From NCBI RefSeq assembly GCF_947568905.1, contig NC_079165.1, positions 34,348,001 through 34,412,000 of the forward strand: DNA of 64,000 nt, written 5' to 3'. This DNA comes from Ostrea edulis. Lineage: Eukaryota. The position numbers and the translations under genes were made by a program. Positions 8,991-60,803 of this stretch are shown here, piece by piece. The stretch's first letter is position 1. Each line of letters begins with the position of its first letter. The notes beneath the pieces are model-generated. The model was not told the origin of the DNA. It searched no databases and saw only the letters and a program-made list of their open reading frames with translations.

Positions 8991-9160
8991 TTTGGTGGTG
9001 GGGGTAGGTTATCAGAGTTCATGGAGAGCCGTTCTACCCCACTACTTCTGTGCCCTTGGTTCCTTCGATATCTGCCCCTCCTTTCCCCTGACATATTACT
9101 GAACGGACTGCCAGGTCTAGAATTTACTCCACCCCTATGATAAAACCAAACATTGGACAT
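8991..9160 (-). CDS. slo2: Candidate alternative first coding exon of Slo2 (MSNVWFYHRGG...SDNLPPPPK)
   Basis: ATG at 9160 with an in-frame stop upstream; 56 codons plus 2 nt, then a perfect |gtaagt donor. Phase 2 fits the 3703 acceptor. Confidence 0.65.
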
Positions 9161-15821: not shown

Positions 15822-15943
15822 CTGTCGTCATTTTGACCATGGTGACTAGATTCCCCCCAGATGAGGTCCCTAAACCTATATCTTGGTGGCAATGGAGGAA
15901 CCTGTGAGTAGGATTCTATAAATTCCATATCATCTTCAAACAT
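15822..15943 (-). CDS. slo2: Slo2 alternative first coding exon, Slick/Slack-A-like ([41 protein letters not shown])
   Basis: Matches the KCNT2 N-terminus [25 protein letters not shown]. ATG at 15943 with an upstream in-frame stop; donor ag|gttagt, phase 2. Confidence 0.92.
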
Positions 15944-21818: not shown

Positions 21819-22838
21819 CTAGTAATATTGTTCACGTTCTGTGTATTTTTACAAACATTGTATTCAAAGGATTGAAATTTACACCTTGCAGCATTTTGTG
21901 CTCATTTTCATGTTTGAATTACACAGTTTTAAATTCACACAGTGAATCTTTTATTACTCGCTTTAGAACTTCATCTCATAAATTGAAGGTCGAAGTTGGC
22001 CTGAAGACATGATAATATTGTCAGAGAGTGACGGTTATGTACTGTTTGGGAGCTAAATGTCAATACAGAAGACGAGTTCCACTGTATTTTAATATATATA
22101 CATGATGACTTGAGAAAAAATATGTTACGTAGAGAATATAATTAAAACGAAATTTATTGAACAAAGCAAGGTCAAAATTATTACAATCGGCAACCTTCTA
22201 CAAGGAGGGAAATTTTGTTTGGATGTGCCAAATCTTAGAAATATCTGGGTAAGAGAAATTGTTAGCTTATTTATTTAGAAATGAAAAAGTGATTTGAGGC
22301 TTACATTAGAAGTCTCTTCAATGTTGTGTGTAGCTAATAGGAATTGATGGGATCCTGGTACTAAATAGAATTGATTTCAAGCAAATGTATTTTTATTAAA
22401 CTTTACTCTGGCATTCTTATCTGTAAAACATGGTTGCATCAGAAATATAGACTCATGACATAGCATCAAAATTATCTTTATTCCCAAAGTCACTAATTCG
22501 GTCCCTGTGTTCGATGTACATGTAGTATTACATGTATATGATTTATTACCCTACATTTCTCACAATAAACTTTCCTTAACTAACCAACATTTTAGCAGGT
22601 GATTCTTTTGATAATGCAGAGTTGGTAGTGAAGTGTCCTTATCATTGACACTTAGAGGTAATTTCTTATCTGAAGGACAGGAGGTGAACTCTGTGAGAAT
22701 TTCATTACCATCTGCCTTAGCTCCTTTTGTAAGACCAACACGTAATACTAACACGTACACAATGATTTCATGGATATTTCTTTCTTCAGGTGAAAGAGGG
22801 ACAACTCTTACAAATCAACCTAGAATGCGTTCAATACC

Positions 22839-23154
22839 ATGAGAAGGAAATGGAGAGTATTGGTCGGCTGTATGGTAATCTTTATTCTGTTTGTTTCCTA
22901 CAAAATACTGGAACCAGACATCAAAGGAAAGGTAACCCAGGTGGAAGCAGATAGCAAAGGGCTTCCTGTGGCAAGGGAAGACAACTCTGATGCGGAAGAA
23001 GTGGAGACTCCGCGAGACCCAGAGGAGATTGTGAAGGAACTGCGGCAGAAATATTGGCTAGATTTCAGCTTTCCTTTGAAGGACTCCCCATGGCGTTTGG
23101 CAGAGAGAATGGTGAATGACAGGAAGGTACATCCGGAATATGTTCCAGAGCTAG
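22839..23154 (+). CDS. FAM20B: FAM20B glycosaminoglycan xylosylkinase, coding exon 1 (signal-anchor and stem)
   Basis: Acceptor at 22789, ATG at 22839, hydrophobic VLVGCMVIFILFVSY after basic MRRKWR. SPWRLAERMV...VHPEYVPELG resembles FAM20B. Donor g|gtatga. Confidence 0.93.
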
Positions 23155-23213
23155 GTATGATAATGTATGATTTCTCTCACTATATCCTACAGGATAAAAC
23201 TTGTATATACTTA

Positions 23214-23431
23214 TATTGTATACCGGGTAATTTTATCCCCACCCCCTTTTTGGCCCTTTTACATTTGGAAGTGATTTTGATTTTGTCCTGTTTTAAATTT
23301 GCCCAGACACAGGATATTATAAGAATCAAAGATCAGAGATTTTGAATTTGCCCAGTCTTAAATTTGCTCACCGACAATGAGAGAAAAAGAGGTGAAAATA
23401 GAGTGGGGGTGAAGATTTCTCCGTATACAGT
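23214..23431. mobile_element. Short MITE
   Basis: tgtatataccgggtaattttatcccc ... ggggtgaagatttctccgtatacagta inverted ends. Confidence 0.55.
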
Positions 23432-23516
23432 ATCTGTATGGAGAAGATCTCACAAGAGCAAATCAGAATTTGTAATTCTGGTTTGATGTCTTACATATAC
23501 AATGTACAGGAATCTT

Positions 23517-24477
23517 TTTTATACGCCCGTCATTAGATGGGACGTATTATGTTGTGGCACTGTCCGTGTGTCCATCCGGCTGGCTGGCTGTTCATCCGTC
23601 CGTCTTGGGTCATGTTTTCCAGACTTTTTTCCATAACAGATGCATGTACAACTTTGAAATTTGGTCCCAATATCTCCCTCAAGAATTGTAAGAGTGAGTT
23701 TGCATTTCAGCTGGATTGGTCCATCCTTGACCTACTTTAGGGCTATAAGTAGGTCAAACAATTTTCTGGACTTTTTTTCGTTACAGATACAGATATTGCC
23801 CTGAAATTTACACATAGGCTTCCTTTCAGAGGAATACAAGTTTAGTTTGCATTTCAGCTGGATTGGTCCATTCTTGACCTACTTTTGGACTAAAAATAGG
23901 TCAGACAGTTTTCCGGGCTTGTTTTTTTCATTACGGATACAGATATTGCCCTGATATTTAGTCAAAGGCTTCCTCTCGGAGGAAGACAAGTGCAGTTAAC
24001 ATTTCAGCTGGATTGGCACACAATGACCTACAGTACTTTAGGGGTAGAAGTAGGTCAAACAGTTTTCCAGATTTTTTTTTTGGTATGGTCAAAGGTATTG
24101 CTCTGAAATTAAGTCAAAACCTCCCTTTCAGAGAAATACATAATCAGTTAACATTTCAAACATTTCAACTTAATTGGTGCACCATGACCTACTTTAGGGC
24201 TAAAAGTAGATCAAATGGTTTCCTGGACCATAGCTGGACCTTAGCTGAACCAATATCTATATCATAGATAGATATTGCACCGACATTTTGTCACAACCTC
24301 ACTCTCGGAGAAATACATAATCAGTTTACAGGTCAGATGGATTGGTGCACCATTACCCACTTTAAGGCTTTTCTGTTCAGAATGTGTGTTGTATCAATTC
24401 ATAGTGCACAATATGCTTCCAGGTTGAATTTCACTGTCCGATGGGCGTATATTGTACCATTTGCGGTACTCTTGTTC
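23517..24477. mobile_element. Helentron-like element with internal ~150-bp tandem units
   Basis: ttttatacgcccgtc start and gatgggcgtata...gtactcttgtt end. Repeated cagatattgccctgaaattt / catttcagctggattgg units. Confidence 0.6.
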
Positions 24478-24599
24478 TCTTCTATTTCAAACAGTATATG
24501 TTCACTTGCAATGTACATAGTTAAAAATAAATCTGAAGTGGAGCAAAAACCTTGTTACTAAACCAGTACACATTTATAGTATGGAGTAACTTGACTTAC

Positions 24600-24790
24600 C
24601 TCTCTAGGTTGGTCTCGGAGCCATAAGCATAGTTGAGAATATCTCTATCGGGACCTAACCCGAATGCTGGAACTTTCTGATACCTCACATTCTTCATAGC
24701 TCTAGTTTTGTTGATTCTGTACCTCCTCCGAGGTTTGATAGGGTCATTTTCCCCCTCCTCACTCACTAAAGAAGATGATGAACTGAGCAT
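24600..24790 (-). CDS. slo2: Candidate distal alternative first coding exon of Slo2, nested in FAM20B intron 1 (MLSSSSSLVSEEG...YGSETNLER)
   Basis: ATG at 24790 with an upstream in-frame stop; 63 codons plus 2 nt; perfect ag|gtaagt donor. Phase 2, like the other first exons. Ends in ...ER immediately before the shared V-R-V-E-F exon. Confidence 0.62.
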
Positions 24791-25252
24791 TGTACAATTA
24801 TCACAATAAGATTAATTTTTCCAATTTTTTCATTAATAGATGTATAATGAAACTGTTGAACCCTCCATTTTATGTGCTGTATTTAATTAACTCTACTAAA
24901 CCAAGGGTAATCCTCTAAGTTAATCTTGCATATTTTGATTTAAATGTGAACTGGTAATTTGAATGCATTGATCAGTGTATCAATAACGTTACATTATATA
25001 TTATGATTAAGAATTCTGTGTTTTTTAATACATTTACTCTACAGCTTGTTTGTAGATGAGGAATTTCCCTAGATTAGTATATGCTTGACTATTTAAGATA
25101 AGCCATACATAATAAGTACTTGGTAAATATTCATATTCAGTATGGGTCTTTGTATTTTTGGAGAAGTTTAGAGTGATCCTTATCACTTCAAAGCTGTATG
25201 ATCCAATGTTCATTATTTTTGGTACATAATTACTTTAAAGCAGATTAATTAG

Positions 25253-25666
25253 CAGGGATAGACATTAACTTTTCTTCTTACTTGCCCTTCGGGCAAGTAA
25301 ACTCGAAGTTTTACTGGTCCAAATGAAAAACTTAGTTGTCCGAAATATTTACTAGTAAGACTCTAATAAGCCTGTCAACCAGTAATTCTAATTATCTCTC
25401 TCTGTCAATTGGTGATACAGTACAATCTACTAGAATGGGCCTTCACTATAACCTGATGATTTGGTAAAGAAAACAGTAATATATGGAGTTGGACTTTACG
25501 TTCTAATATTTGATATTCATCAAGCTTAACACAATTATCAGAATAATCACATTTCCTACTTAAATAATCACTTGCCCCATCGGGCAAGTGGGTATTGAGT
25601 TTCACTTGTCCGAACTGGGTTTTCACTTGCCTCGGGCAATCGGACAACCGTTAATGTCGATCCCTG
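25253..25666. mobile_element. MITE with 17-bp CAGGG TIRs and 5-bp TSD (attag)
   Basis: attag|cagggatagacattaac ... gttaatgtcgatccctg|attag. Confidence 0.8.
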
Positions 25667-26419
25667 ATTAGTTTTCAAGTTATTAACTCCCCATAATTAC
25701 CTGCTTGAAATCATTTGCATGTAAAAGAACACGGTGAGAAGATTTTTGAAAAAGTAAACATAGTGGGTATACGCATAAATTATACATTGTCTGTTAGGTG
25801 TCTAAAAATATCCCCACATGCGCCAGGGGAATCCCAACATGATGTATATAACTCATATGCAACTGTCTAACTTTAAGGCTGAAATACAATGAATTACTAA
25901 AGAGACTTTGATATTTTTATGGCACGGTACTGTTGTAACAAAATACACAGCTTTACACAGATAAGACCACCAATGATCTAAAAGTCTGAACTGGACACAT
26001 GGTTGTTGCTTGAAATGGCTTGAGTGACGGTTGTTTGTAAACACCAATTTAAATCAAATAATTCTGGTTAACACAGGTGAAATAATGTATGACATGTCGT
26101 ACAGCCTCATAATTATGTTTGTGTGATGATTTAAGAGCATTTTTACAAGGTGGAAAGTCAAAATTCAGAACATACAGCTTTAAAATGAAAGGGAGAAAGA
26201 GAGAGATTAGGGGAAAATTTTATACATACTAACTTTCTATGCATGCCATATGCCTAATGTACTGCATTTCATGAAATTGACACAGTAGAATAATCACCTT
26301 CCTTTAAAGACCTTATGTTTTGTGAAATGCTGGCTACCTCTGGAACAAGATTCGCTGTCTAGGACTCGGCTTGTGTAGCATCAAACATGCTCTTGTGTAT
26401 CAAATCAATTGAGAAACAT

Positions 26420-26960
26420 AAACATTTTAAGGAGGTGATATTGAAGTATTGCTACATAGATATAGGATGTTGATGACAGAGAAGTCATCCAGTTTGTTAC
26501 ACAGTTGTTAGTCTGCCATTAACATCTGTATCTAGTGAAAATCCAAGTATTTAACAGATAAGAAAGATTCTATGGTGTCCTTTATCACTGAAATATATCA
26601 AATCAACATATGAATAAAAAGTTTATCTAAAAATATTCAAGTGAATGTTATTGATGTACCTAAATGTTGAGTAGAAGGCCACTGAGCAAGATATTTCTTC
26701 TCGTGTAGAAGTTTTTTAATAAATTGTGTCTCATAAGAATACAAGAACAGACCTGTTAATATGGGAGCATAATCTATGCCCCTAGGTGTCTCAGCAGACT
26801 GTAGGAAGACCTGATCTCCAAACAGTACATAGATACATGTATTTTCAATGAGGAACTCCAGCATTCTTTTTATATCAACTTCAAAGTACTCGTTTAGTAT
26901 CATTCTCTTACTATATGGCGTGTTAAACAAGCTTCTCTTACACCTCTGTCAACGCTTGGA
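26420..26960 (-). pseudogene. Degenerate reverse-transcriptase fragment of a Penelope-like retroelement
   Basis: DIKRMLEFLIEN..VLFGDQVF...YAPILTGLFLYSYETQFIKKLL, then frameshifted FRYINN (YIDD decayed). Resembles the GIPMGTNCAPLLADLFLYSYE-type RT common in bivalves. Confidence 0.7.
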
Positions 26961-27473
26961 ATCACATGACAAGATATAATGATATTTTATGTATATCACA
27001 TGATATAAACAGTCATTCTCGTTTCCTTTCCTTTTAAAAGTTGTGCCAACAGGTGATACTTGTCATCAGGCCGCTGACACTTTTTTTTAAAAGTACATTT
27101 TTACCACTTAGCTGTTTGTCTCTTATTTCACAATTTTTATTGTATTTTTTACAGCCTTTGTTACTTTTGATTCCATGTTTACATTAAATGTCCACCACGT
27201 GAATGCCCTACATTCATATGCATATCACAAAGTAGTACCAATTTTGGATCAGAAAACAGTGATTTTAAACAATTTACAGTAAGCTTCAATTTAATTACAC
27301 CTAAAGCATTTTGTAATATGACTGAATATCTAATCCAAAACATAAATGTTGGATATTAATAGAAACTCTTTTACAAGATTTCTGTAAAAAGCCATTGACT
27401 GAGTGTTGACAGAGGTATAGTGCGAGTAGCACACGGAACTCTGGGTAGATCAGACTAAATTTTAGTTAAGTAA

Positions 27474-27494
27474 TTTTTAGCTCACCTGAGCCTT

Positions 27495-27538
<44 letters not shown>

Positions 27539-27870
27539 TGTCTTCGTCGTCATTCTCGCGTCATAAACTTTTCATCTACTTCTCCAGAAACCACAAAGCA
27601 TTATTGGGTGAAGGGTATTCAAGTTTGTTCAAATTAAGGGTCACGTCCTTCTCCAAAGGGAGATAATAGCGAAATAGTGAAAATGCATTAGCAACTTTTA
27701 AAAAAAAAAAAATCTCCAGAACCACCAGGCCAATTTCAACAAAATTTGGTACAAAGCATTTTTGGGTTAAGGGGATTCAAGTTTGTTCAATTGAAGGGCC
27801 ACACTCTTTTCCAAGGGGAGATAATAGCGAAATAGTGAAAATACATTGACAACATTTGAAAATGTTCTTT

Positions 27871-27912
<42 letters not shown>

Positions 27913-28231
27913 AATGCTTTGCTGAAGGGAATTCAACTTCGTTGAGATAAAGGGTTATGTCCCCATCAAAGGGGAGATAATCACCAAAATGCCAAAAATG
28001 GGTGCCAGGTGGGGTCATTTATTAATCTTCTCAAGAACCAGAAGAATTGAAATTTACATGAAAGCTTTTTGACATAGTGCAGATTCAAGTTTGTTAAAAC
28101 CATGACCCCTGGGGATAGGTTGGGGCCACAATAAGGATCAAAGTTTTACATACGAATATATAAGGAAAATCTTTAAATATGGACCAATTAAGGTATCTCA
28201 GGTGAGTGATGTGGCCCATGTTCCTCTTGTT
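27474..28231 (-). mobile_element. Helentron/pearl-like element with internal ~150-bp repeats
   Basis: ttttagctcacctgag ... ctcaggtgag..gtggcccatg..cctcttgtt ends; repeated ccagaaccac..gccaatttcaac units. Confidence 0.7.
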
Positions 28232-31200
28232 TGATGATCGATTGATTACAAGATTTGAATATTTTTAATGCAGAGCCAGCTGTGTGGTAACCATTAAAGG
28301 AACCATGAATTTGCTAGTAGTCAAAATCCTGATCATTAATAAGATTTATCCTAAACAAACTATCCTATCATCAATTAATGATAAAACCCCATATTTATAT
28401 CATTAATGGTAAAAATCCACTCCCACTGATGTTAAAAATATTAATATCTTTTATTTATACAGGATTGCACAATTAGTTATGACTGTATGCAAACCACAGG
28501 CAATTATATCGATTGGGTTTGAATTTTACTACTCTTTAATTGTAAATTCAAACCCAAGTGATACAATTATCTGTGATACAAACTAGTTTATATTCAATGT
28601 GGTCCTGTCTTTAAGCATGTATTACTGTTAAATGATGAAATTTGACCTGCTATTAAATTTAGTGCCGTTGGCGCAAGTGACCTTTTGTGCCAAAATTAGT
28701 AGACTAAGTACATGTATGTGTGCATGCCAGTGATTTTCCATTTCAAAAGTATTGTTTGAAAAGTTGCAGGCCATTCTGCAGTTGATTTAATACTGTACTC
28801 ATGTTGGAAACATCCACTTGTGTAATATCAGAAGGTCGATATTTTGTATACACACTAACACAGATGAACAGTAATTGTCTATCAACAAACATTGTTTCAC
28901 AAAAAATTATAAGTGCACAATCATTTATTTGACTATATTTACAGGTCATCATATTCTGAGAAATACAAAAAATCGTCACTTAACGTAGTTCCACACTCCT
29001 GTGACGTCATAAGATTTAGCAAAGTCAATGATTTAATGACTGGAACATAAATTTTGCTGGGGTCTTTTTCAATAGTTATTTTTTAAAAAATTGTCAGCTA
29101 TAAAATATTTCAAAAGTCTTAGTTATATTTGAATAGTCAATGATATGTGTTTCAAAATATTGAATCCAAGGACAATAACTCCGTTTTCAATAAATTATTT
29201 ATCAAGTCCATTATGCGATAGATTTCCTTTATTTTTCACAAACATTTTACTAAGGTGATAAGGAATCATTATCTGTGTCTTTTCATGAAATTACATAAAA
29301 TTTTAAGCCATGAGTGATTTTGAATAGCTCAGCTGTATGGTGCCAGACTTTGATTTTTTATGGGGGTATACATACTCTAGAAGCTATAAATTTGAAATTA
29401 TTAAGGAAAGGTATGAATTTTTGTTCATAAATAAATGTAATAGGTGTACATCTACTAATATAAACAGAAAAAATGATATGTAAACCATGCTATAAGGAAA
29501 TTGTGTCCACATTTATTCGTTTTTTAACATTTTGGAGAATAACGCTAATTCAATAATTTTGCACTTATTATTCTAAAACTTGATGAACATATTGAAAATG
29601 ACATGTGTTTTAGTTATTGACATGTTTCTTGATAAATAAATGCAATTAAACAATTTTCTTGTTGTTTTTATTTTAAAATAACAACAAATAACTGTTTCCA
29701 ATGAATTTCATAAAAATCTACATGGGGTACATGACTTCAGTAGTGTCTGTAATGAAAATTAATATGGAAATCCTTAACTAATTTGCATTTTTTCATTACT
29801 CTGAATGTTAATTTATTGATTCCAAACAAAAAAATGCTACCTAAACCCCAAAAATCCAGGACTAAGGACCCACCTTAATACTAAAAGTCTGCAATAAAAC
29901 AAGTTAAAATTCAGTCAGAACTACCGGGGTATACCCACAAAAACTACATCAAACCTACGTCAATGCATTTAGAATTCCTGTGTTTTCCAAGGACTTTAAC
30001 AAGTTCTTTCTCATGGATGAACCACATGACATGGACTTTCACTGGTTTCAGGACAGAGTTTGAGAAATATGGAAAACACTGTTGTCATGCAGCTTTCCGA
30101 GAATGAAAGCATATACCAAACTTGAAATTCCTTTTTCGATGCACCCTATTCTCGTTTTGCAATATATTAGTACAATACTAGTACTGGAGTTAAAAAATTG
30201 ATTGGAAGCTATGGAGTGTATGCTGGAGAAAAACAATAGCCTTAGATCAAACTCTGTGCCAAATGTATTATTCAACGAATTACTGCTGTGCCAAAATTAA
30301 TTAACTCCCATGTCTTGGCACTTGCGTTGGGACCAAAATACGTATTCACCAAACTATCTCGTTTTACAGTACATATCAAAACATTCATCATCAAACATGA
30401 AAATACCACAGATGATTTACATACATGTCATAGAACTGAGCCACCTCATAGAAACCATAACACTGATATAAAACAGCCAAATAAGTACCATTCTGACCAC
30501 TAATGATATACATTTTGGATTTAATGTTTAATGGTAATTACTGTCATTGATCTCAAAAATCTAGTCTTTAATTTATCATGAGGAATGGTGATGTAAAGGG
30601 AAAAATTGTACATTTTGATACTTTCCGAAAGGTTTTGTGATTTTGAATTTACTAAAATATCTTTGGAATTTTTTGAGAGCCACATTTGATTTACACCACT
30701 TCTCTCATATCTTGTGGCAAAATAACATCAAAGTTTCTCCTTCACAGCAGTGAATATTTTCTTGAGGAGCTTGGTAGAACATTTACAGGGTCATGCAATG
30801 TATGTTTGTTTTAAGGGGTTTTATGAAGTTTTGGAATCCAGCATAGGTACAGTAACTCAAATTCATTAGTCCCATTGATTGAATATTAAAAATGTGTTTA
30901 AAATGGAAACTTGATTTTAAAGAATTTTGTCGTTAAGAACATGCATAAGTTAAATTACCTATTTTGGAATTAAAGCTAAGTTTCTCTTAAAAATACAAAT
31001 GTAATAATGGGCCTTAATTACGAACAAAAATATGCTGATACAAGCTTTGTCATCTAGAACCAGAAATATGTTGAGATGCAAAACAGAACTTTTTTGTGAT
31101 TAAGAATATTTATAATGTTTATGGCACCTATTCCTTTGTTTTCAAATTTCAGTCTATAAATTACTGACAATGTGATTTGGAAACCATTTATAGTATTTTT

Positions 31201-31545
31201 ATCTTTAAATTCACACACAGTGGTTTCAAAATCCATCACAGACGTCAGTCTGTATTATGGTTGAAATGAATTCAAGTATGGTCTTACACTGCCTCTTTCA
31301 AATAAGCTATTTAAAACTTTCCAAAGAACAGGGTAAAGGGTAACTATGATGTAGATCTAACTGTTTGTTGACTTAAAAAGTGAATCAAATATTTGGGTTT
31401 TTTTTTGTAAGACATCATGATTGATATCTGACAGTGTGTTACAAAAAAGAATGGTCAAAGAATCAAATCTTTTGGCTCTGTACAAAATACATTATGAATG
31501 ATCAGTGTTGTAAGTCAATTGATGAAATTAAGACAACTTCATTTA

Positions 31546-32957
31546 GGCCACAGTTTTTTAATTTATTAGTTTACGGATTTAAAAAAAAAAAAAATTAAGG
31601 TCAGTCGGGAGGGGAAAAAAAATAGAATAAACATTTGTAATATCTATCGTTGTTTTATTTTCAATAAATCATTGACATTATTTCATGAGTACAAATAAAC
31701 AAAACATGTATTTTAAAAATATTAGATAAAAAATTCTTTAGAGTGACTAGTACGTTATGAATTTTGAAAAAAAAGAGTGAAATTTCAAATTCAGTGTATA
31801 ACTACATACATGTATCTATGTTACACTTTGGTAGAAAATAAGCCGAGAATGTATAAGGTCATATCTCTTTGATGTTGTAAAGTATCCAGTATTTATATAA
31901 TGTTGTTCAGTAATTTTGCTGTATATGCTCAATAAAGATTTTACCTTTACAAATTGTAAACATAATGAAAAAAATTAATATCAGCACTATTACAATTGTA
32001 TGTAGTAATTCCATTTTTAATTTCAGATTGTTTATACCCCCATGAAATAATTTTTAACCCCATTTTTCCCACATAGACATGCCCATGGAATTATCTACCA
32101 TATCTTTTTGAAAGAAATGTTTCTTGTTTTTCATTTTTATTTGATACTCAAATTCTTTCCACCACTACACAAGGTATACTAATTTACGAGAAATATGCAT
32201 ACTTTTCTGAGTTTTATCTGGTCATATTTTTTACAGGCGTTCATTATAATATCAAATGCATCTAACAATTTCTCACACTGTTCTATTCCCTGTTAGGATT
32301 TTTGATGGCAGAGATGCACGTACATGTATTCAAATACGTTTGTTATGACATGTACTACTGTGGTATAAAGTCACTAGTTAGAATAATCTAACTGTGTCTC
32401 GGTACAGGCCCTCACCACACTCAAACCAGGTCCGTAGAACATTATCAGTTTAACGATAGAACATCCTATCTAGTAAAGTCGCTAACAACTGTACCTTCCT
32501 CTCATCTTTTAACACCCAAATAGCACTGCATTTTGTGTTATGTTAACAGCAAGAATACCGCCAATTGTATGAGAAGTATTTATTGCTATCAATTCCTTTT
32601 ATTTCGTGATGAAATGCTATCTGGCATCTGTTTCGTCGACAAGAACGACATAGGTATCGTTACTGTCATCGTGCGTGGTCATATCTGTTTACATGGTTTT
32701 TAAAAATACGGAATAACGATATTTCGCAAAACGAATAGTGATTACCAAATACAAATCAATAGGTTTGCAGTTCACGATTTTCTATTCGTAAAATTGAAAA
32801 TTCATTTTTTTATTTTCGGTTTGACATGTTGGGTAGATCGAATCAGCGGAATTTTTAAAAAAAAGTGGAAATTTGCATTTTTAAAAAAAAAAAATTTTGA
32901 TTCCCCAGAAATTAGGGTCGGCAGATCCGTAAACCAAGAAATAAAAAAACTGTGGCC
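31546..32957. mobile_element. Non-autonomous DNA element with ~35-bp TIRs and TTA TSD (Zator/Harbinger-like)
   Basis: tta|ggccacagttttttaatttattagtttacggat ... atccgtaaaccaagaaataaaaaaactgtggcc|tta. Confidence 0.7.
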
Positions 32958-33011
32958 TTACTGTTCAAATTTCACTCAATGACCCTTTCATTTTGATAGA
33001 ATTTTCAAATA

Positions 33012-33182
33012 CAGTTGATCTTCGATATCTCAAACATCGATATCTTGAATTCTATGGATATGCTGAATTGAGTTGGAAGTCCCAATTGCATTGCTTTTGT
33101 GTAACCTCCATATCTCAAAATCTTGGATACTTGAATTTTTTTCTTGAGGCCCCATCAAGTTTGAGATAATGAGGTTTGACTG
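33012..33182. mobile_element. Tc1/mariner-type MITE
   Basis: ta|cagttgatcttcgatatctcaaac ... gtttgagataatgaggtttgactg inverted ends. Confidence 0.6.
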
Positions 33183-36100
33183 TTCTTTTATTTGTAATAT
33201 ACATGTATGTTGCAGCTTCATGATATGCATGTCTCATTCACAAGAGTGCCAACACTCATTGAACTCATCTGTAAATGTAGCGAAGGTTGGAATTATGTTT
33301 ACTAATGCGTTTTTTTCATGTTTACTACAATTTGATCTTGTTCACTTGATAAAGAAGCGATGCAAATTGCGACGCACCTTGGAAATGAAAACCAACTAGG
33401 CCAACAGTGCATATTGGAATTTGCATTGCTGCGATTTACAGTTTGCATAGCTCGTTTACTAGGTGAATATTAAGCAATTTGGAATTCTCTTGTATGTGGA
33501 ATGTAACTGTCTATGTGAATGTCAGAGGTGATGCACAAGATTGGCTCATTGAACCTTTTTCATGTCACACACATAACTTTTCTCACAAGTTTTTTAGTTC
33601 ATTCTATGTTGATCATTGACACTAATCAATAATAACCGATAATTATTTCTGATAAAATGTTGTTATTACTATGTTAGTTTTGATTAGATGCATAACAACA
33701 TATGGTCTGTTTCAAGGCTGTCAGCTCAATCCTTTCCATAGTTTTGGACTAATTGATTAATTTTAGTTCACTCCAAAGTGTACAGATTTATGTATATTGG
33801 GATATTGATGATTTTGTTCTGTCTACCTAAACTATGAAAGATTAATTTTGAAAGGCATTGAATTTCAGAATATCTCTTAAATCTAATGACTCAATGTTGA
33901 TACATAATTAATGTATGTAATCAATGGAAAAGTCTGATACATGCCATTTGGTAAAGCACTAGGCATGCAATCATTGTCATGTATTGTAAGTACTGTATCT
34001 TGCAGGGGATTGGAATATACATCAATACATCTTAATTACCCCCAACTTTTTCCTACTCTCAAACCCCAAATCCTCCCCTGCAATGTACAAAACCGCTGTC
34101 TTTATGTGTACAATTTATTCATTTTACATTGAATGTATAGGATGTTCCTTCACAGTAACGTGTGTACGGGCGCCTTACTTTGGTCACGCATCAGTGACAT
34201 TTTCTATATATTAATAATTAAATACATAATACAGAGTCAAAGATTTATTGAGTGAGACTAAAATAATCTGTGCAAATCATGACATTGTATACTTACCCAG
34301 TCAGTGACCACATTGGCTAAAGCCCACATCTCATTAAAAGTCAATAACTGATTGGGTATCCGTCATTCACATTAATGACCAGTTATTGAACAGGACAGTT
34401 TCACAATGGTTGAAAACCCTGGTCAACTCCGAACTATAATTTCTCTGATGGGGCAATAGTAGAGGAATTGTGGAGTTACTGACTTAGGTGTACGTGTATG
34501 AAAATCAATGACCGACTGAATTTACTTCTGTCAACATATACTGTTACGCATCATAGAAAGAGCATCTGAATACGAAACAGGTTTTTTTCTCCCCTAATCA
34601 TGGAGTCTGGTATTAGTCTTTGCTGAAAGTCTGGCAGCGAGTGTTTTAGTCAGAGAGAATGAATAAGCAGAGTTATTTTTGTGAATGCCTGATTGAAGTT
34701 AATCATAAACGTGTTGCCTATAATTGCAGTTTGATTAAAAAATTGCCACATCAACTTTTGAAGATACGAAATTTTTACTGTGAAAGCAATTGATTATTTT
34801 TCCTGCACCGAGTATGTGCAATGTATTATTCATGATGAGATATATTACTCAACAATAAATTCCCTCCCGAGAGATAATTGAAATTACATATATATGTACG
34901 TTGCTAATAAACAAATTGATAATGGAATGGCAATTACATGAGCATTCCTACTTCTTTAAATCATTAGTAAAATTAGACTTTTCAAACTTTGAAATTTTAC
35001 ATGATTGAAATAGTAAGTAAACCTGATATGGAGTAAATGAAAGAACTTAGAACTTCAGTTAAAATATGTACAAATTGGATGAGTTGTCTTTCCCTATAAC
35101 CAATGTATGGTGACTTTAGAATGTGCCACAACAAATCAATTCTCTGTATAATAATAGGGCATTAGAATTTATACAATATCCCTTATAATAGACAGCAAAA
35201 GTTCCAAAAAGGTAGAGGTGTGGTACGTTTCGTCCGTATGGAATCTAAAGGCCTACATGCACAAAGAAGTTATTTGAATTTGACAAGATTGTCTTTTGTG
35301 TATGCCTATATGTAACTATATATAGCTTGAATGAACTGACGTGTACTGCTTTCTTTGAGGATAGAGAGCTTAATTAGAGTACCTCATGTAGGACCCAAGC
35401 AGGTTGGAAATGGAATTGCATGGATACCAATACTGGATTTGTCAGGATGGTAATTCTAGTATTGAAATTAAATTAGGGGAGAGTTTGATCAAAACAAATT
35501 ACTTATTTTCTGAACTCTACCATTGGTCTGAGAACCATCTATTTCATGTTTGTCTCAAGACTTTAAATTTTGTAGACAGTGTAGAATTTGGGTGTAGTGT
35601 TGAATTGGAAGAAATTTGATATGATGCATGAGCTGCGAGTAACACGTGGTGTAATTGATATGGGATATAGGATACCTGAATTCTTTGTATCATAATAGTA
35701 TAGAACATTCACAAATGTGACATAAAGTGAAATATATGGTGAATACTTGAAACTGATGTAAATTACCAACACCATACTTTTTAGCAATTCCAATGCCACA
35801 TTATTTTGAAGTTAGAATGCATACAGGAATGTGAACATTAGTTCTAGAATATATCTGTAGTTGACGTAAGATTCATCATTTATCAATCATGAGTATTGTA
35901 CAATGCAACTATGCATGTGACAGAAAAGCTGTTATCCAACACTGATGATAAGGTAGGGATGAGGGTTCGTTATCATGGCAAAGACTGCTTTAACATGAGA
36001 CCTTGGTTTTTAAGTTCTCGTCCGATAGACCTGTGACTTTTACCTTTGATGCTTATTGATTGGTGAAGGATTATTCACTGCGTATTTTAAATGTTAGGTT

Positions 36101-38754
36101 TGATGTAGCTGCATGACTGGGGCATCGTCCAACCCAGAACCTCCCTGTTCCAAAGCGAGCCACCCCTATTACAAGGCTTCCACAGAAATTGTTCCCCATA
36201 GAAATTCTATACAGTAGGCTAATTCTGTTTTACAGAACATGAAACAAGTATTTTTCAAGAATTAACATGCAAAACTGCACCAACACCAGATAACATCTGA
36301 TTCAACAGGTCAAATCAAATTACACCACAACAATTGGCCTTAAGCTATGGCATGAGTTTACAGCAGATATTTGCCCGATCAATTATGGAAATTTGTAAGA
36401 TGAATGCCAAAACTGTATTATGAATTCAAAAAAGTATTGGTACACTCACATGCATATCATTGAATTATTCCTTACCTGTAATTATAACATGCTGCTGATC
36501 AGGGGTACTTCCAAAATACTGTTTCATGATTGGTCAAAGAAACAAATAAATTGAATCTGAATAGGACTATGTGGTAGATGTCTCGTATACATGTCTATTA
36601 CATTAAAGATACCACGAAGATTTCATGTGGATATTGATTTCATACTCCGAAAAAACTTCATTACACACTCTTGGGTTTGGGATGAAGTATTGGATCCAGA
36701 TAAATTCCAATAAACCAACGGGTTAAGCTGCTTCAACATGATCAGTGACAGGTTTGGGAACTTTAAACCATCCATACATCACTAACAATCCAGAACAATT
36801 CTGAATCTAAATGGTTTAGGTTGCATTAACTGATCATGAAAGAAATAGATTTTAGGTACTTTAAACCATGAAAACCTAGTCTGCAAGAGTGGGTTCAGGA
36901 GAGTTAGATTTTATTTAATGGCAACCCATACTGAATTTTATAAAATCATATTGAATTTTATAAGATCATATTGAATTTTATGAAATAATAATAATAATAT
37001 ATAGCCTTTATTTATCTAGGATAACACAAATTAGCATATAGCTAGTTTCCATTGTGGTTCTGCATTAAAACATATTACACAAACATAAAATTAACATCTA
37101 AAATTATTATCTAAATATGCATACAATATAAAAAGAAGAGGGGAGGGGGAATATAGCATAAGACACACCTAATTAGTGATAAAATTATTACCTAAATATG
37201 AATACATGACATGAAAGGAAAGAAGAAAAAGTAGCATAAGACACACGCACACACAGTGCCATATCACAACTACATTTGGCACACCTGAATAAAAAGAGGA
37301 AAGCACAATGTTTAAGTGCTACTTCTATGAAAATATTCCATCAAATACATGAAATCCTGTTGAATTTTATAAAATCCGATTGAATTTACAAAATCAGTTT
37401 GTTATGGATGTTAGCCGTTTCAGACTGAGGTTGTGAAAGATTTTGAAATGGGCCTGTGGATGATCCTTTGCTCTCATGTTGAATGAACAGCTGTTGGTTG
37501 TACTTTGTTTCTAACATATCAGAATTTTTTTTTTACCCTTGGCAAAACTTTGTGGAACCTGATGTAATTTCTGGTGTTAATTAGTGAAAGCCAAATAAAT
37601 GCTTTTGTGATATGGAAATGTTAATCAAAATTATTTTTTCAAAAACGATATTATGATTTCTTCTGGGACTTGTGATGATACAGTGTTGCATGATCTATTT
37701 TTTGTGGGTTTTTTAATGTTCAATGTGGAGGTGTTAATTAATGCATGGGACCCATGGGGCTCTTGTTGCTATAATTTTTATGAAATCTAAAACATTTTTA
37801 CAAAACATCTGACATAAATTCTGTTCATGGTTTTTGAAACTTTGATCAACAATTGCAGAAATTTGACTAATGAAACTTTAACATCAACTTTCATCATTCA
37901 ATTTCCTTACAAAATCCTTTGTAAGAGTGGAACAAAAACCTGGAGTGTGGTGTTTTTACAATCATATGATATATGTATGGCTGTACAGGAAAAAATAAGA
38001 CACTAGCTGAGACCAGAAACTGGAGATATTTGTCACAAATATCTTGTGCTGATAATGGTGGAAATTAAGGTTACTATAAATTTGAATCTTGATAAGTTAA
38101 TGAAAATGATTCAGAAAAGTGGTTGTTTTCAATGAATTATAGAAGTTAATTGACTCATTTATGGTGCTACGTTATATATATAATCAATGGTTTTGGATCT
38201 CTAACAATCTGAATCAATATACAGACTATAGTGCTTTTCATTTCTGTTGGAAACTTTCACTGAAAGAAGGGCCTGTATGTACCTGCAGTTTCTCTACCAA
38301 ATGTAAACTTTTCATCAGTAAAATATCTTTTTTTAGTGACATATTGATGACTAGTGTTTTTTAAATGAAAATCAACAAAACAGAGTAGCATAATGAGGAA
38401 GCCCCCAGACTGGCAAAATTTATTTCCCATACTGATGAATTGGGGGACCGCCTGTTGAAAAGATATGTTTCAAGTATAATTTCTCATTCAAATGTTTGTC
38501 ACTTTATGTTCAAGTCTTTAGAAATAGAACAGGAAGATCTATATGTCAATGAAATATTAGAAAGAAAGAAATATACAAATAGGCAAAGAAATCAAAATTC
38601 ACTGAAAAAGTTTCCAAATTTTTACACAATTCATATACACTATTCTGCAGTTCCCTTTTCTTTTGTAAACAATCATCAGCAATCAGAGGGAGCAGTTTTC
38701 AAAGAGACCAAAAAAAAAAAATAAAGAATAGGTTTTTATTTTTTTGTGATTTCT

Positions 38755-38872
38755 CCAATCTAATTAAAATTTAATCCTTTGATCCGCTCACCTAGGATCC
38801 CTTCACATACCCTAAGGTATGTATAGCATTCATAGATGAGCAGATCAAAGGATCTAATTTTAATTAGATTGG
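38755..38872. repeat. Short inverted repeat / hairpin element
   Basis: ccaatctaattaaaatt..atcctttgatccgctca pairs with tgagcagatcaaaggat..aattttaattagattgg. Confidence 0.8.
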
Positions 38873-40134
38873 TGATAAAGTTTCTTAAATACCTTACAAA
38901 ATGATGAATAATTTCATTAAAAAGTATGTGTTCATGATTGTACGGAAAATGAATTTAGATGACTATAATTTACACAACTATATGTATGTCCAGAAAGTTC
39001 TTACTTGAGAGGAGGAAAAAATATAAATGCCATCAACTCATAACGATAGTTTCAATACTCTGATTTATACTGTACCAGTTGTAGTCTATTAACCAGTAGT
39101 ATTGTGTGAGGCCAAAGGACTGAAGATTGGTATGGAATTGAAAGACATTTCAGCTTAAATTCATTCAGCATCGATATTGTTATCAGTAAGAGTTCTTGAT
39201 AGTGAATTTGGTTTTTCTTGTAATTAACCATTGTGTACCATGGAAATGCTTAGTATGGCAAAGACCTGAAACTTGAATATACATAATTAGTAATAGTCAA
39301 ACGACCATTCTTGCATGTGTTGACAAGCTAATTACTGTCTATTAGAATAGTTTTGCTCTGTGAATTGTATTTACAATTCATTTGTTCACTATTCATTGGC
39401 TGAATGAAGACAATTGGATCAGAGTTTACAGCAAATACTTTGATGTATAGGCACCATGCAGACATCATAATTCTGTGTATATTACTGACTGTGTTATTCC
39501 AGACTGGTCACCCTTCAGGACTATTTGATAGAAGAAAAAAAACACATTACAAACGTTAATAACTTTCATGGCAAAAATCTCCCATCTTCCGTTTCACATT
39601 AACTGCCCATAATCAGGATCCCAAAGCAATAGATGGATTTTTCCGTGGAAATGATCAATAAGAAATTAAACATCCTAGGTGTGAATGTTTTAGATAAGGC
39701 TGCAACATGGGTTTTTTTTTTCCAAATGATTATTTCTACATTTCTGATAATGAAATGATCTGCTTCGGCTCCTTAAAAGGAAAAGCAATGACAGCTTTAG
39801 TATCAGGATAACTCATCACTGTGTGACTCCAATGAAAGTTTTTGCTTCTATAAGGTGTGCAGTGTGACCAGCAGTATTGATCAAAAAATAATCCAGTGTG
39901 TGAAGTATATTTTTCATGTTTATCCACTCTGTCTCTGGTGATATAAAATCTACCAGATGTCACCTCTTTTATAATTGCTATATTAAGAATCGGATATGAA
40001 GGTCAATAAAAGGGAGACTGCCAAATCCCATGTGAGCATGTGGTCGTCATTTCACAAAGACGTGTGCAGAAAAATGAAGGTTGATAATAGTGTAGTTTTT
40101 GCCTGCTAAAATAACATTGATTCTATTTTTGTAG

Positions 40135-40258
40135 GTTCAATTCTTCGTGAAATGGCCACAAGGAAAATTGTTTCAGCTGACACAGGTTACAAAGGGACAC
40201 AACTCAAACTTTCTCTGATATTAGAGGGAGGCCAAGTTGTAGCATTCAAGCCCAAATG
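40135..40258 (+). CDS. FAM20B: FAM20B coding exon 2 ([41 protein letters not shown])
   Basis: tgtag| acceptor and tg|gtaact donor; matches human [36 protein letters not shown]. Confidence 0.96.
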
Positions 40259-40510
40259 GTAACTAGAAAAGGAAAGAAGGGGGGGGGGGGGTAATTGCTT
40301 TAAATCTAATAGCTTAGAATGTTATCAATTTCTTTTAATTTGTGAGTAATTTTGAACGTGAATTCATGATTTATGGAGTAATGAGCAAATTGAATGTTGG
40401 CCAAAATTTTATCTCCTTGATTAATCTGATAAACAAGATTGCTGAAATAAAATCTGTGGAACTGTAAGTGATTTATAGTCATTCTTTTTAACTGTGTATG
40501 AATATATCAG

Positions 40511-40597
40511 GTACAGAAGAGAGGACATTTTCTCAGAGACTCCATATTCTGGTGCTGACCGACATAATGGTGAAATTGCAGCATTCCATTTAAACAG
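40511..40597 (+). CDS. FAM20B: FAM20B coding exon 3 (YRREDIFSETPYSGADRHNGEIAAFHLNR)
   Basis: atcag| acceptor and ag|gtaatc donor; matches PYAGYDRHNAEVAAFHLDR. Confidence 0.96.
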
Positions 40598-40756
40598 GTA
40601 ATCGGGTAGAAAGGATTTACTGTTATCACACTACAATAGCGGGGTTTTGCACTAGCTGTCTATGAAAACTATTTCATGGGGAGTGAAGATGCTAATTTGA
40701 AGTGGACTGATTTCATAGGTGTATGTTTCATGGGTCATCTGTTTTATCAATACATT

Positions 40757-42211
40757 TTTAGGTCACCTGAGTCACCCAGGTGATCTTTTGCTATCCTTTT
40801 TCGTCGATCTTCATGCATTGGTTGTAAACTTTTGAACATTTTCAGCTTCTTCTCTTGAGCGACTGAACCAATTCTAACCAGTTTTGGTATATAGCATCTA
40901 ATGGGTAAAATCCTGTGGGGATCCGGGTTAGAAGTACCCCTTGCTTGTTGTAAAAGGCAACTAAATTAGGCGGTCTTTCAGATGAAATTGCAAAAACCGA
41001 GGTCCCATGTCACAGCAGGTATAGCACAATAAAGATCCCTCCTTGCTCAAAGGCCGTAAGCGCCGAGCATAGGCATAAATTTTGCAGCCCTTCATCTGCA
41101 ATGGTGACGTCTCATTATAAGTGAAAGATTCTCGAGATGGACGTTAAACAAGATACAATCAATCAATCGATTTGATGTATGAAGTGAAGATAATGATCAA
41201 TCTCATAAATCCTATAAAGAATACAAAATTGAGAGCAGAATATGGCCCCTGGACACACCAGAGGTGTCTTGTCTCCATATGAGTGAAAAATTCTCAAATG
41301 GAATGTCAAACAATATACAATCAATTGATCTAATGGGTAAAGGGGAACCAAAAAGGTTATTTTATGGACCTGCCTCCCTGAAGCATGAGAATGGGGGGGG
41401 GGGGGGGGGGGCAAAACCATCAACATTTATGCAATCTTATAAAAATCTTCTCTACTCCTGGAAATCAAGCAGTGTAACTGTTTGCATGATTGTAACAAGC
41501 AATGAGCCTTCTACTAAAATGTTCAGGCCCCAGGGTGAGGCCAAATTGGTTATATTTTGAAAATGCATTATATCTCAGAAAAAGTACTTTTGGACATCAA
41601 GGAGGCAATATGTTTGCATGATTATAATGAGTACTCGAGCCTTTACCTAAATTGTAAATTTTAATTACCCTGGGACTTGGTCCCCAGGGTGACACTATGT
41701 TGGTCATATATTGAAAATGCATTATATCTCAGAAAAAGATCTTCTTTACTTTTGGATGTTAGGGAGGCAGAATGTTTGCATGATTTTAATGAGTACTCAA
41801 GTCTCAACTAAAATTGTAAAACTCATGATTCCTGGGTTTAGGATCCAGGGTGGGACTAAGTTGGTCATGTATTGAAATAAGTTATATACTAGAAAAATAT
41901 CTTCTTATGGACTTCAAGGAGGCAAAATGTTTGCATGGTTATAAAGAGCATTCAGGCATCTACTAAATTTATGAAATTTAGGACTCAAGGGTTTTATTAT
42001 CATTATTACATGAGCAAGCCAGCATGGAGTTTTCTATTAATATTCTTTGGCAGTAGATTTCAGCTCAATGTCGAATTACTTAATGATACATGTATGTTAG
42101 AAATATTTGTGTATTCATAATTTTTAAAAATTTCATGCACATGAGTCATGGGCTTTCAAATATTTGATGCATGGTACTCAGGTGAGCATTAAGGCCCATT
42201 GGTCTCTTGTT
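40757..42211 (-). mobile_element. Helentron-like element with ~130-bp internal repeats, interrupted by a nested SINE block
   Basis: tttttaggtcacctgag start and ctcaggtgagcattaaggcccattggtctcttgtt end; repeated gaaaatgcattatatctcagaaaaag. Confidence 0.65.
40912..41168 (+). mobile_element. SINE family A, non-tRNA-head variant (nested)
   Basis: cctgtggggatccgggttagaa...ctcaaaggccgtaagcgccgagcatagg...acgttaaacaa followed by a (caat)n tail. Confidence 0.75.
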
Positions 42212-42306
42212 GTATATTCAAGGGCAGTAACTCACAGTGACATTTTACATTGATATTCTCTTTATTGAGAGTAATTAGTAAATGATGATCAATGTCTATG
42301 TTTCAG

Positions 42307-42416
42307 GATAATGGAATTTAGACGGACTCCTCTGGTAGTAGGAAGGAAGATAAACTTAAAATCAGAAATCATTCCTAATGGATCTGAGCAGCTGCTGAAA
42401 ACTTTCTTCGTTAATG
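42307..42416 (+). CDS. FAM20B: FAM20B coding exon 4 (IMEFRRTPLVVGRKINLKSEIIPNGSEQLLKTFFVN)
   Basis: tttcag| acceptor and g|gtaaaa donor; matches [33 protein letters not shown]. Confidence 0.96.

Positions 42417-60763: not shown

Positions 60764-60803
<40 letters not shown>

What the first reader, a model, noticed from the sequence alone, without database searches (positions are those of the whole stretch)
22790..24790. Reciprocal head-to-head overlap: Slo2 first exon inside FAM20B intron 1, FAM20B exon inside a Slo2 intron
Seen: the candidate Slo2 exon 24790-24600 lies antisense within FAM20B's 17-kb intron (23155-40134). A transcript from it must cross FAM20B coding exon 1 (22790-23154). FAM20B also has an acceptor at 22789, so its promoter lies further left, within Slo2 territory. 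Inference: convergent Pol II traffic over at least 2 kb could give transcriptional interference or mutually exclusive expression, coupling a neuronal K+ channel isoform to GAG-linker biosynthesis.
Basis: partly seen in the sequence, partly recalled or inferred. Interest (0 to 1): 0.72.

Follow-up and report, generated by a model that had tools for sequence, protein, structure and literature searches.

The report
Oyster Slo2 and FAM20B genes interleave
In the flat oyster, an alternative first coding exon of a sodium-activated potassium channel gene really does lie backwards inside the first intron of the neighbouring Golgi kinase gene FAM20B, but public gene models already show this overlap and nothing yet shows that it links the two genes' regulation.

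Summary

- **Channel exon.** Window 24790-24600 (minus) is a real 5' coding exon of the Slo2/KCNT2-like gene. RNA-like contigs end exactly at its donor (24600) and carry 3-4 kb more sequence from elsewhere. The ORF, its phase and its donor are conserved in three other oyster lineages (dN/dS 0.1-0.25). In annotated Crassostrea/Magallana proteins the orthologous peptide is followed directly by a peptide identical to window exon 2.
- **FAM20B exon.** Window 22790-23154 (plus) is FAM20B's first coding exon. Both of its boundaries are used as splice sites. Its next exon starts at 40135.
- **Already annotated.** The window is Ostrea edulis chromosome OX387705.1. In the public annotation the two coding ranges already overlap by 1,859 nt, from 22839 to 24697. 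The same interleaving is annotated in C. virginica and C. angulata.
- **Other first exons.** The distal exon is one of at least three alternative first coding exons, all in phase 2. It also carries a conserved internal acceptor.
- **Coupling.** The proposed transcriptional interference, or link between the channel and GAG synthesis, is untested. Both RNAs occur in the same two libraries.

Verdict: a real, conserved and already annotated antisense-interleaved gene pair of an ordinary kind.

The parts
24600..24790 (-). Distal alternative 5' coding exon of Slo2/KCNT2-like. It is 191 nt long, in phase 2, with donor AG|GTAAGT after 24600. The conserved ATG is at 24790, and the second ATG (Met32), where the public annotation starts the coding range, is at 24697.
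   Evidence: sequence. RNA-like contigs X1 record 8 (4180 nt) and X2 record 16 (3066 nt) end exactly at 24600; conservation and dN/dS; the orthologous peptide is the N-terminus of annotated oyster KCNT2-like proteins; annotated coding range starts at 24697.
24765..24767 (-). Internal 3' splice acceptor inside the distal exon. The AG is at 24767-24766 and the first exon base is 24765, in the context TCTTCTTTAG|TG. This makes it a hybrid first/internal exon.
   Evidence: CTCTTCTTTAGTGA is identical in all four oyster lineages. M. gigas, C. angulata and C. virginica isoforms with other N-terminal mini-exons (MKEYGNTYNEHAIIT, MKEK, MKCT, MPEAGLMMTVSKRER) all join at the Val that follows. Its use in O. 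edulis is not shown.
22790..23154 (+). FAM20B first coding exon. The ATG is at 22839, and the exon encodes a signal-anchor N-terminus and stem. It has an acceptor before 22790 and a donor after 23154.
   Evidence: sequence. RNA-like contigs X1 record 3 and X2 record 11 align only to 22789-23156, with 71/43 nt more on the 5' side and 494/1409 nt more on the 3' side; exon and acceptor conserved in three other oysters; annotated FAM20B (426 aa, Pfam Fam20C) coding range starts at 22839.
23155..40134 (+). FAM20B intron of 16,980 nt that contains the Slo2 distal exon in antisense.
   Evidence: GT at 23155 and AG at 40133-40134, with phase 1 on both sides.
40135..40258 (+). FAM20B second coding exon ([25 protein letters not shown]...).
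   Evidence: aligns to residues 73-113 of glycosaminoglycan xylosylkinase 5xom, E 9.5e-6; splice sites.
40479..48257 (+). Remaining FAM20B coding exons, lying within the ORF segments 40479-40598, 42275-42430, 45176-45373, 45972-46169, 47712-47858 and 47973-48257. Exact splice sites were not determined.
   Evidence: ORF segments. Pfam Fam20C, E 5e-18 to 7e-21, on three of them; best solved relative is xylosylkinase 5xom, ahead of FAM20C and FAM20A.
15822..15943 (-). Slo2 middle alternative first coding exon, Slack-A/Slick-like (MFEDD...PPLPPRYRFRDL...NDDR). It is 122 nt long, in phase 2, with donor AG|GTTAGT.
   Evidence: sequence; matches the KCNT1 N-terminus in 8hir, E 3e-5; 100% identical to O. 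edulis KCNT2-like isoform X1 (XP_056009818.1).
8991..9160 (-). Third alternative first coding exon of Slo2 (MSNVWFYHR...NLPPPPK). It is 170 nt long, in phase 2, with donor AA|GTAAGT.
   Evidence: sequence; 80% identical to the N-terminus of M. gigas isoform X8.
3624..3703 (-). Slo2 common exon 2 ((R/K)[26 protein letters not shown]). Its acceptor after ttttttcag is the shared target of all three first exons.
   Evidence: sequence; peptide identical in all annotated oyster isoforms, directly after each alternative N-terminus.
2815..2908 (-). Slo2 exon 3 (SLRIRIFNFAIKLLTCILYIVRVISDSVPTE). Exon 4 lies at about 218-310, and the rest of the gene is beyond the left end of the window.
23516..24476 (.). 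Dispersed repeat of about 960 nt that includes three 150-nt tandem units. It is inserted between the two convergent exons and accounts for the 1,445-nt gap here, against 383-504 nt in the other oysters.
   Evidence: tandem units; depth hundreds to thousands of times the single-copy level, with loose ends at 23516 and 24476; absent from the corresponding gap of L001.

Best explanation
The window is Ostrea edulis DNA. Its Slo2 (KCNT2-like, sodium-activated K+ channel) gene runs leftwards on the minus strand. It has at least three alternative first coding exons, at 24790-24600, 15943-15822 and 9160-8991. All three end in phase 2 and join the common exon 2 at 3703, giving channels that differ only in the cytoplasmic N-terminus. 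This is the layout known for rat Slack-A and Slack-B, which use separate promoters.

The most distal of these exons lies antisense inside the 17-kb first coding intron of FAM20B (GAG xylosylkinase), 1.4 kb from FAM20B's first coding exon. The primary transcript of the distal isoform therefore runs through that FAM20B exon, and FAM20B's primary transcript runs through the distal exon.

The arrangement is an ordinary antisense-interleaved gene pair. It is old, being shared by Ostrea, Crassostrea and Magallana. It is most simply kept because the two genes are interlocked. Shown here: the exons, their splicing, their conservation and the overlap. Inferred: that the overlap has no special regulatory role.
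For: - RNA-like contigs are spliced exactly at 24600, 22789/90 and 23154-56.
- Phase and donor are identical for the three first exons.
- The distal ORF is under purifying selection in four lineages: dN/dS 0.10-0.25, indels in threes, ATG and GT kept.
- Annotated proteins of C. angulata, M. gigas and C. virginica carry the orthologous peptide, followed directly by [27 protein letters not shown], which is identical to window exon 2.
- These proteins are Slo2, not BK: KCNT1 structures score 1317 bits against 136 bits for BK.
- The window matches O. edulis OX387705.1 exactly. There the annotated KCNT2-like coding range starts at 24697 and the FAM20B coding range at 22839, on opposite strands.
- The same interleaving is annotated in C. 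virginica (11.9 kb of overlap) and C. angulata (5.5 kb).
- Slack-A and Slack-B differ only in N-termini driven by independent promoters (PMC3850776).
Against: - The junction from the distal exon to exon 2 was not seen directly in O. edulis. The contigs' remaining 3-4 kb could not be placed, because only one read-laying run of 6 kb was allowed.
- The run type of X1 and X2 is a guess by the tool. I infer RNA from their exon-only coverage.
- The transcription start of the distal exon is not mapped. Contigs stop at 24729/24722, short of both the ATG at 24790 and the internal acceptor.
- That the overlap is regulatorily neutral is an assumption, not a result.
Confidence: 0.85

Rival explanations
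1. The overlap is functional. Convergent transcription of FAM20B and of the distal Slo2 promoter interferes in cis. Cells with high FAM20B expression would then silence the distal Slo2 isoform and use the inner promoters, or the reverse.
For: - The transcription units do overlap on opposite strands.
- The two convergent exons stay only 383-504 nt apart in three other oysters, and 484 nt here once the repeat is removed. Other distances in the locus vary two- to three-fold.
- In C. virginica one annotated KCNT2-like start codon lies 8 nt from the acceptor of FAM20B exon 3, so its 5' UTR may overlap that exon.
Against: - Both spliced RNAs are present in both RNA-like libraries, although this is bulk material and depth cannot be ranked.
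- No sequence between the exons is conserved beyond the closest relative.
- In O. edulis the exons placed in the window do not overlap each other.
- Interlocking alone explains the conserved synteny.
- Four lineages are too few to call the spacing constrained.
- No paper links the two genes.
Confidence: 0.1
2. In O. edulis the 24790-24600 exon is not a first exon. It would be used as an internal exon through the conserved acceptor at 24766|24765, fed by undiscovered Slo2 5' exons deeper in FAM20B intron 1, as annotated in Magallana and C. virginica. Alternatively, transcription starts inside the exon and translation begins at Met32 (24697). This modifies the best explanation and does not exclude it.
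For: - The acceptor motif is identical in four lineages.
- Annotated isoforms in three species use upstream mini-exons located 4.5-6.3 kb further into FAM20B intron 1.
- O. edulis RNA contigs stop at 24729/24722, and the annotation starts the coding range at 24697.
Against: - The ATG at 24790 and the 25 nt up to the acceptor keep the reading frame in all four lineages. C. angulata models X1, X2, X4 and X7 start there.
- No relative of the upstream mini-exons was found in the window, though these peptides are very short.
Confidence: 0.3
3. The 24790-24600 ORF is a chance ORF or belongs to a different minus-strand gene, not to Slo2.
For: It has no Pfam or solved-structure match of its own. The join to exon 2 was not observed directly in this species.
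Against: - It shows purifying selection and conserved splice signals.
- It is spliced at the predicted donor into transcripts of at least 3-4 kb.
- The orthologous peptide heads annotated KCNT2-like proteins in three species.
- The annotated KCNT2-like coding range in this very genome starts inside it.
- No other coding-looking minus-strand ORF lies between 24600 and 15943.
Confidence: 0.02

Closest known systems
Slack-A / Slack-B isoforms of rat Kcnt1, with alternative promoters and alternative first coding exons (Brown et al. 2008, as reviewed in PMC3850776)
   Same: One Slo2 gene with several first coding exons. Each has its own start codon and joins the same second exon (VQVEFY... in vertebrates, VRVEFF... 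here). One N-terminus is the conserved PPLPPRYRFRDL type, and the others are lineage-specific. In rat the N-terminus sets activation kinetics and heteromer trafficking.
   Different: The oyster distal peptide shows no detectable similarity to any solved KCNT1 construct, so it is not an orthologue of the Slack-B exon. The oyster has at least three first exons plus mini-exons feeding an internal acceptor. No functional data exist for the oyster isoforms. No overlap with FAM20B came up for the vertebrate genes in my paper searches.
NCBI gene models for oyster KCNT2(-like): C. angulata XP_052673344/345/347, M. gigas XP_065931399-410, C. virginica XP_078326058/059 and XP_022326608, O. edulis XP_056009818
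   Same: They contain the orthologous exon, or in O. edulis a coding range that starts inside it. They also overlap the FAM20B model on the other strand.
   Different: They are automatic predictions. Nobody has described or discussed the overlap in the literature I could search. The O. edulis model uses Met32 rather than the conserved ATG at 24790.
Natural antisense, interleaved or nested gene pairs in animal genomes, and transcriptional interference between convergent genes (general knowledge)
   Same: Two protein-coding genes on opposite strands whose transcription units overlap, with each gene's exon lying in an intron of the other. Synteny is conserved.
   Different: No evidence here of anticorrelated expression, antisense-derived small RNA or exon-to-exon complementarity. 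Only the architecture is shown, not any interference.
Hybrid first/internal exons (general knowledge)
   Same: The same exon carries its own start codon, with an upstream start site implied, and also a conserved 3' splice acceptor used by upstream exons in sister species.
   Different: Use of both modes is documented only by gene models in other oysters, not by reads in O. edulis.

Membership tests
Slo2 / KCNT (sodium-activated K+ channel) gene | Full-length product is closer to KCNT1/2 than to BK (Slo1), with a pore domain plus tandem RCK gating ring | tested here: met
   C. angulata protein P0009, which carries the orthologous exon, scores 1317 bits to KCNT1 5u70 against 136 bits to BK. Pfam Ion_trans_2, BK_channel_a and Slo-like_RCK. 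O. edulis isoform X1 is 100% identical to window exons at 15943, 3703, 2908 and about 310.
Slo2 / KCNT (sodium-activated K+ channel) gene | The 24790-24600 exon is spliced to the common Slo2 exon 2 | tested here: inconclusive
   Met indirectly. The donor is used, the phase matches, orthologous exons are joined to an identical exon 2 peptide in three annotated species, and the annotated coding range in this genome starts at 24697. The junction itself was not read in O. edulis RNA.
FAM20B (glycosaminoglycan xylosylkinase) | Fam20 kinase domain, closer to FAM20B than to FAM20C or FAM20A | tested here: met
   Pfam Fam20C on three exons, 66-75 bits against a cut-off of 26.8; best solved relative is xylosylkinase 5xom (65 bits), ahead of FAM20C (58 and 54 bits) and FAM20A (53 bits); exon 2 matches only 5xom. 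Enzyme activity was not tested.
Antisense-overlapping (interleaved) gene pair | Both genes are transcribed, on opposite strands, with overlapping transcription units | tested here: met
   spliced contigs for both genes. Strand is inferred from the splice-site dinucleotides, since at 24598-24599 the plus strand reads AC, which is a GT donor on the minus strand; annotated coding ranges overlap by 1.9, 11.9 and 5.5 kb in three genera.
Transcriptional interference / mutually exclusive expression pair | Expression of one partner lowers the other in cis, or the two are anticorrelated across cells | not testable with these tools
   One search shows only co-occurrence in two bulk libraries held as contigs, which gives no strand, level or cell resolution.
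Alternative-promoter N-terminal isoforms (Slack-A/B type) | Each first exon has its own transcription start | not tested
   Start codons and phase-matched donors are present for all three exons. No 5'-end data are available, and contigs stop 61-68 nt short of the ATG at 24790.

The most novel reading that the evidence does not exclude
The pairing of FAM20B's first coding exon with the Slo2 distal hybrid exon, convergent and held about 0.4-0.5 kb apart across oyster genera whose synonymous sites are saturated, could be a selected cis-regulatory module. In that reading, FAM20B transcription through the distal Slo2 start sites, or the reverse, would set which Slo2 N-terminal isoform a cell makes.
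Probability: 0.08. Interest if true: 0.5.

Novelty: already known. Interest (0 to 1): 0.2.

Why it matters
If the overlap were regulatory, it would be a conserved invertebrate example of promoter choice in an ion-channel gene being set by transcription of an unrelated housekeeping gene. As it stands, the value is modest.

- It confirms that oysters, like mammals, build Slo2 channels with several alternative cytoplasmic N-termini, one of them the ancient PPLPPRYRFRDL type.
- It shows that the public O. edulis model probably truncates the distal N-terminus, starting at Met32 instead of the conserved ATG.
- It documents an interlocked gene pair that can serve as a synteny marker within Ostreidae.

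Tried and rejected
- **Pfam and solved-structure searches** of the distal peptide and of FAM20B exon 1 found nothing. Both are lineage-specific N-terminal regions.
- **Representative-library search** of the 63-aa peptide returned only two short genomic ORFs. Full-length isoforms are hidden inside clusters whose representatives have other N-termini.
- **Two word-index searches** with the short peptide and with P0002 residues 1-65 found only genomic ORFs, because of the length filter. The link to annotated channels came only from the cluster look-up.
- **Upstream mini-exons.** I searched the window and short contigs for relatives of those annotated in other oysters. There were no credible hits, as the peptides are about 15 aa.
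- **FAM20B's 5' untranslated exon** could not be placed. It is not among the listed pieces of 19300-22788, but that list is truncated. CpG observed/expected peaks at 16001-16400, 17601-18000 and 21601-22000. The block at 17860-17990 is only a candidate, and 21270-21860 is a repeat.
- **Paper searches** for run accessions, KCNT2 with FAM20B synteny, and oyster KCNT or FAM20B found nothing relevant. Brown et al. 2008 is not held.
- **Chance-ORF and other-gene readings** were rejected on the evidence above.
Full report
**What is in the sequence**

On the minus strand an ORF starts at ATG 24790 and ends at 24600, directly before AG|GTAAGT. It is 191 nt long, which is 63 codons plus 2 nt.

On the plus strand a polypyrimidine tract and AG end at 22789. 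An exon follows from 22790 with ATG at 22839 and a donor after 23154, in phase 1. It encodes a short basic N-terminus, a hydrophobic signal anchor and an acidic stem.

The next FAM20B exon begins at 40135 after tttttgtag, in the matching phase, so the intron is 23155-40134, or 16,980 nt. Downstream ORF segments up to 48257 carry the Pfam Fam20C domain. Their best solved relative is the glycosaminoglycan xylosylkinase 5xom, ahead of FAM20C and FAM20A.

**The Slo2 gene**

Minus-strand ORF segments give the following exons:

| Exon | Window coordinates | Features |
|---|---|---|
| Middle first exon | 15943-15822 | MFEDD...PPLPPRYRFRDL...NDDR, 122 nt, phase 2, AG\|GTTAGT |
| Third first exon | 9160-8991 | MSNVWFYHR...PPPPK, 170 nt, phase 2, AA\|GTAAGT |
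| Common exon 2 | 3703-3624 | (R/K)[26 protein letters not shown] |
| Exon 3 | 2908-2815 | |
| Exon 4 | about 310-218 | |

The 15943 exon matches the N-terminus of human KCNT1 in 8hir. The distal ORF has the same phase and the same kind of donor as the other two first exons, so all three can join exon 2 in frame.

**Is the distal ORF a real exon?**

Three lines of evidence say yes.

1. Expression and splicing. In runs X1 and X2 coverage is confined to 22789-23156 and 24600-24729/24722, apart from dispersed repeats. Depth is zero in the neighbouring unique intron. Runs X3 and X4 cover everything evenly, like DNA. X1 record 8 (4180 nt) and X2 record 16 (3066 nt) end exactly at 24600 and hold 4050 and 2943 nt that lie elsewhere. 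On the plus strand positions 24598-24599 read AC, which can only be a GT donor on the minus strand. The tool marks X1 and X2 as 'RNA?'. The exon-only pattern is my reason to treat them as RNA.

2. Conservation. Library and word-index searches found the same ORF in three other lineages: P0001 (81% identical), P0002 (67%) and P0003/P0004 (67%). Exon lengths are 191, 191, 197 and 188 nt, all 2 mod 3. ATG and AG|GT are kept. dN/dS is 0.10-0.25 while synonymous sites are saturated between the distant pairs. In the distant pairs the flanks do not align at all.

3. Annotation in relatives. The 90% cluster of P0003 contains full-length 'potassium channel subfamily T member 2-like' proteins of Crassostrea angulata. 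Their sequence begins with the orthologous peptide and continues with [27 protein letters not shown], which is identical to window exon 2. A search with that N-terminus found the same in Magallana gigas and C. virginica isoforms. P0002 is the C. virginica version. These proteins are Slo2, not BK.

**The organism and its public annotation**

O. edulis KCNT2-like isoform X1 (XP_056009818.1) is 100% identical to the window's 15943 exon and exons 2-4. Its locus L014 (OX387705.1, GCA_947568905.1) contains the window exactly, and window position p corresponds to locus position 34698 - p.

In that record the KCNT2-like coding range starts at window 24697. That is the ATG of Met32 inside the distal exon (MKNVRYQ...). 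The FAM20B (426 aa) coding range starts at 22839 on the other strand.

The same holds in C. virginica, where FAM20B spans 6695-21927 and KCNT2-like starts at 10001 in L015, giving 11.9 kb of overlap. It also holds in C. angulata, with 5.5 kb.

**Extra detail**

- In every oyster the distal exon and FAM20B's first coding exon are convergent neighbours. The gaps are 436, 383 and 504 nt in the other lineages and 1,445 nt here. Of the gap here, about 960 nt (23516-24476) is a dispersed repeat that is absent from the closest relative.
- The first 25 nt of the distal exon end in TCTTCTTTAG|TG, identical in all four lineages.
- Annotated isoforms of M. gigas, C. angulata and C. virginica splice other mini-exons onto the Val that follows. 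These mini-exons are MKEYGNTYNEHAIIT, MKEK, MKCT and MPEAGLMMTVSKRER. They lie 4.5-6.3 kb deeper in FAM20B intron 1. The exon is therefore a hybrid first/internal exon.
- In C. virginica one annotated start codon (MNMYFK, L015 10001) lies 8 nt from the acceptor of FAM20B exon 3. This is a gene model I could not check.
- In O. edulis the RNA contigs stop at 24729/24722. It remains open whether the ATG at 24790, Met32 or an upstream exon is used here.

**FAM20B's 5' end**

The RNA-like contigs carry 71 nt (X1) and 43 nt (X2) upstream of 22789 that are not on the adjoining genomic sequence. The acceptor is therefore used, and a 5' exon exists further upstream. The acceptor is conserved in the other oysters.

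I could not place that exon. No second piece is listed within 19300-22788, but the listing is truncated. CpG-rich spots at 16001-16400 and 17601-18000 are only candidates.

**Mechanism**

The best-supported reading is structural. The gene has alternative promoters and first exons that give Slo2 channels with different cytoplasmic N-termini. In rat Slack-A and Slack-B such N-termini change activation kinetics and heteromer trafficking (PMC3850776). One of these 5' exons has come to lie inside the neighbouring FAM20B gene.

- Both spliced RNAs are in both libraries.
- In O. edulis the exons placed in the window do not overlap each other.
- No conserved non-coding block lies between the exons.
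- Interlocked genes keep their synteny without any regulatory need.
- No paper connects the two genes.

The fairly constant 0.4-0.5 kb spacing is the only hint of constraint. It rests on four lineages.

**Limits**

- Only one read-laying run of 6 kb was allowed, so the 24600-to-3703 junction was not read directly in O. edulis.
- Contigs give no strand or level.
- No eukaryote genome collection was available to test molluscs outside oysters.
- Exons were searched singly by reference. 

**Verdict**

The structural interpretation is supported and the functional inference is untested. The feature is already present in public annotation and is of an ordinary kind, so interest is low.

Noticed in passing
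window 8991-9160 (-): A third alternative first coding exon of Slo2 (MSNVWFYHRGGVNS...NLPPPPK, phase 2, AA|GTAAGT). It is 80% identical to the N-terminus of M. gigas KCNT2 isoform X8 and rich in Arg, Ser and Pro. The finding did not mention it.
   Followed up: partly
window 24765-24790 (-): The first 25 nt of the distal exon double as a polypyrimidine tract plus AG acceptor. The motif CTCTTCTTTAGTGA is identical in four oyster lineages, including silent positions. It is a dual-use stretch, coding and splice signal, of a hybrid first/internal exon.
   Followed up: partly
window 24697 vs 24790 (-): The public O. edulis coding range starts at Met32 (24697), although a conserved in-frame ATG lies 93 nt upstream and is used in C. 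angulata models. The O. edulis model may be truncated at its 5' end, or this species may truly start later.
   Followed up: partly
window 23516-24476: A dispersed repeat of about 960 nt with three 150-nt tandem units lies between the two convergent exons. Its depth in the DNA-like runs is hundreds to thousands of times the single-copy level. It also appears in the RNA-like runs, and it is absent from the closest relative's contig L001.
   Followed up: partly
window 20482-21072 and 21270-21860: Two further high-copy dispersed repeats upstream of FAM20B's coding exon. Depth is up to about 10,000 times single copy in run X4, and both are also present in the RNA-like runs. The second lies just left of the CpG-rich stretch at 21601-22000, overlapping its first part.
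   Followed up: no
L015 9993-10019 (C. virginica): An annotated KCNT2-like start codon (MNMYFK, then GT) lies 8 nt from the acceptor of FAM20B exon 3 on the other strand. Its 5' UTR would overlap that exon. It is either true exon-exon antisense or an artefact of unstranded reads in the gene model.
   Followed up: no
window 17860-17990 (+): A CpG-rich block: 19 CpG in 17601-18000, observed/expected 1.26 against 0.49 for the whole window. It lies between the Slo2 15943 exon and FAM20B, and is a candidate for FAM20B's untranslated first exon or a shared promoter region. Unverified.
   Followed up: no
window 7248-7580, 8490-8800, 55245-56430, 59956-60504: Several long tandem or low-complexity repeat arrays give long spurious ORFs: SSSPRFILVQGYC units, ISFPTSKSGNTWRRSLLYQ units, LSLSRSPVSLFW units and poly-Val/Gly. 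The last two lie in the region of another first-stage note, on a Ly6/uPAR-like protein at 53653-62988.
   Followed up: no
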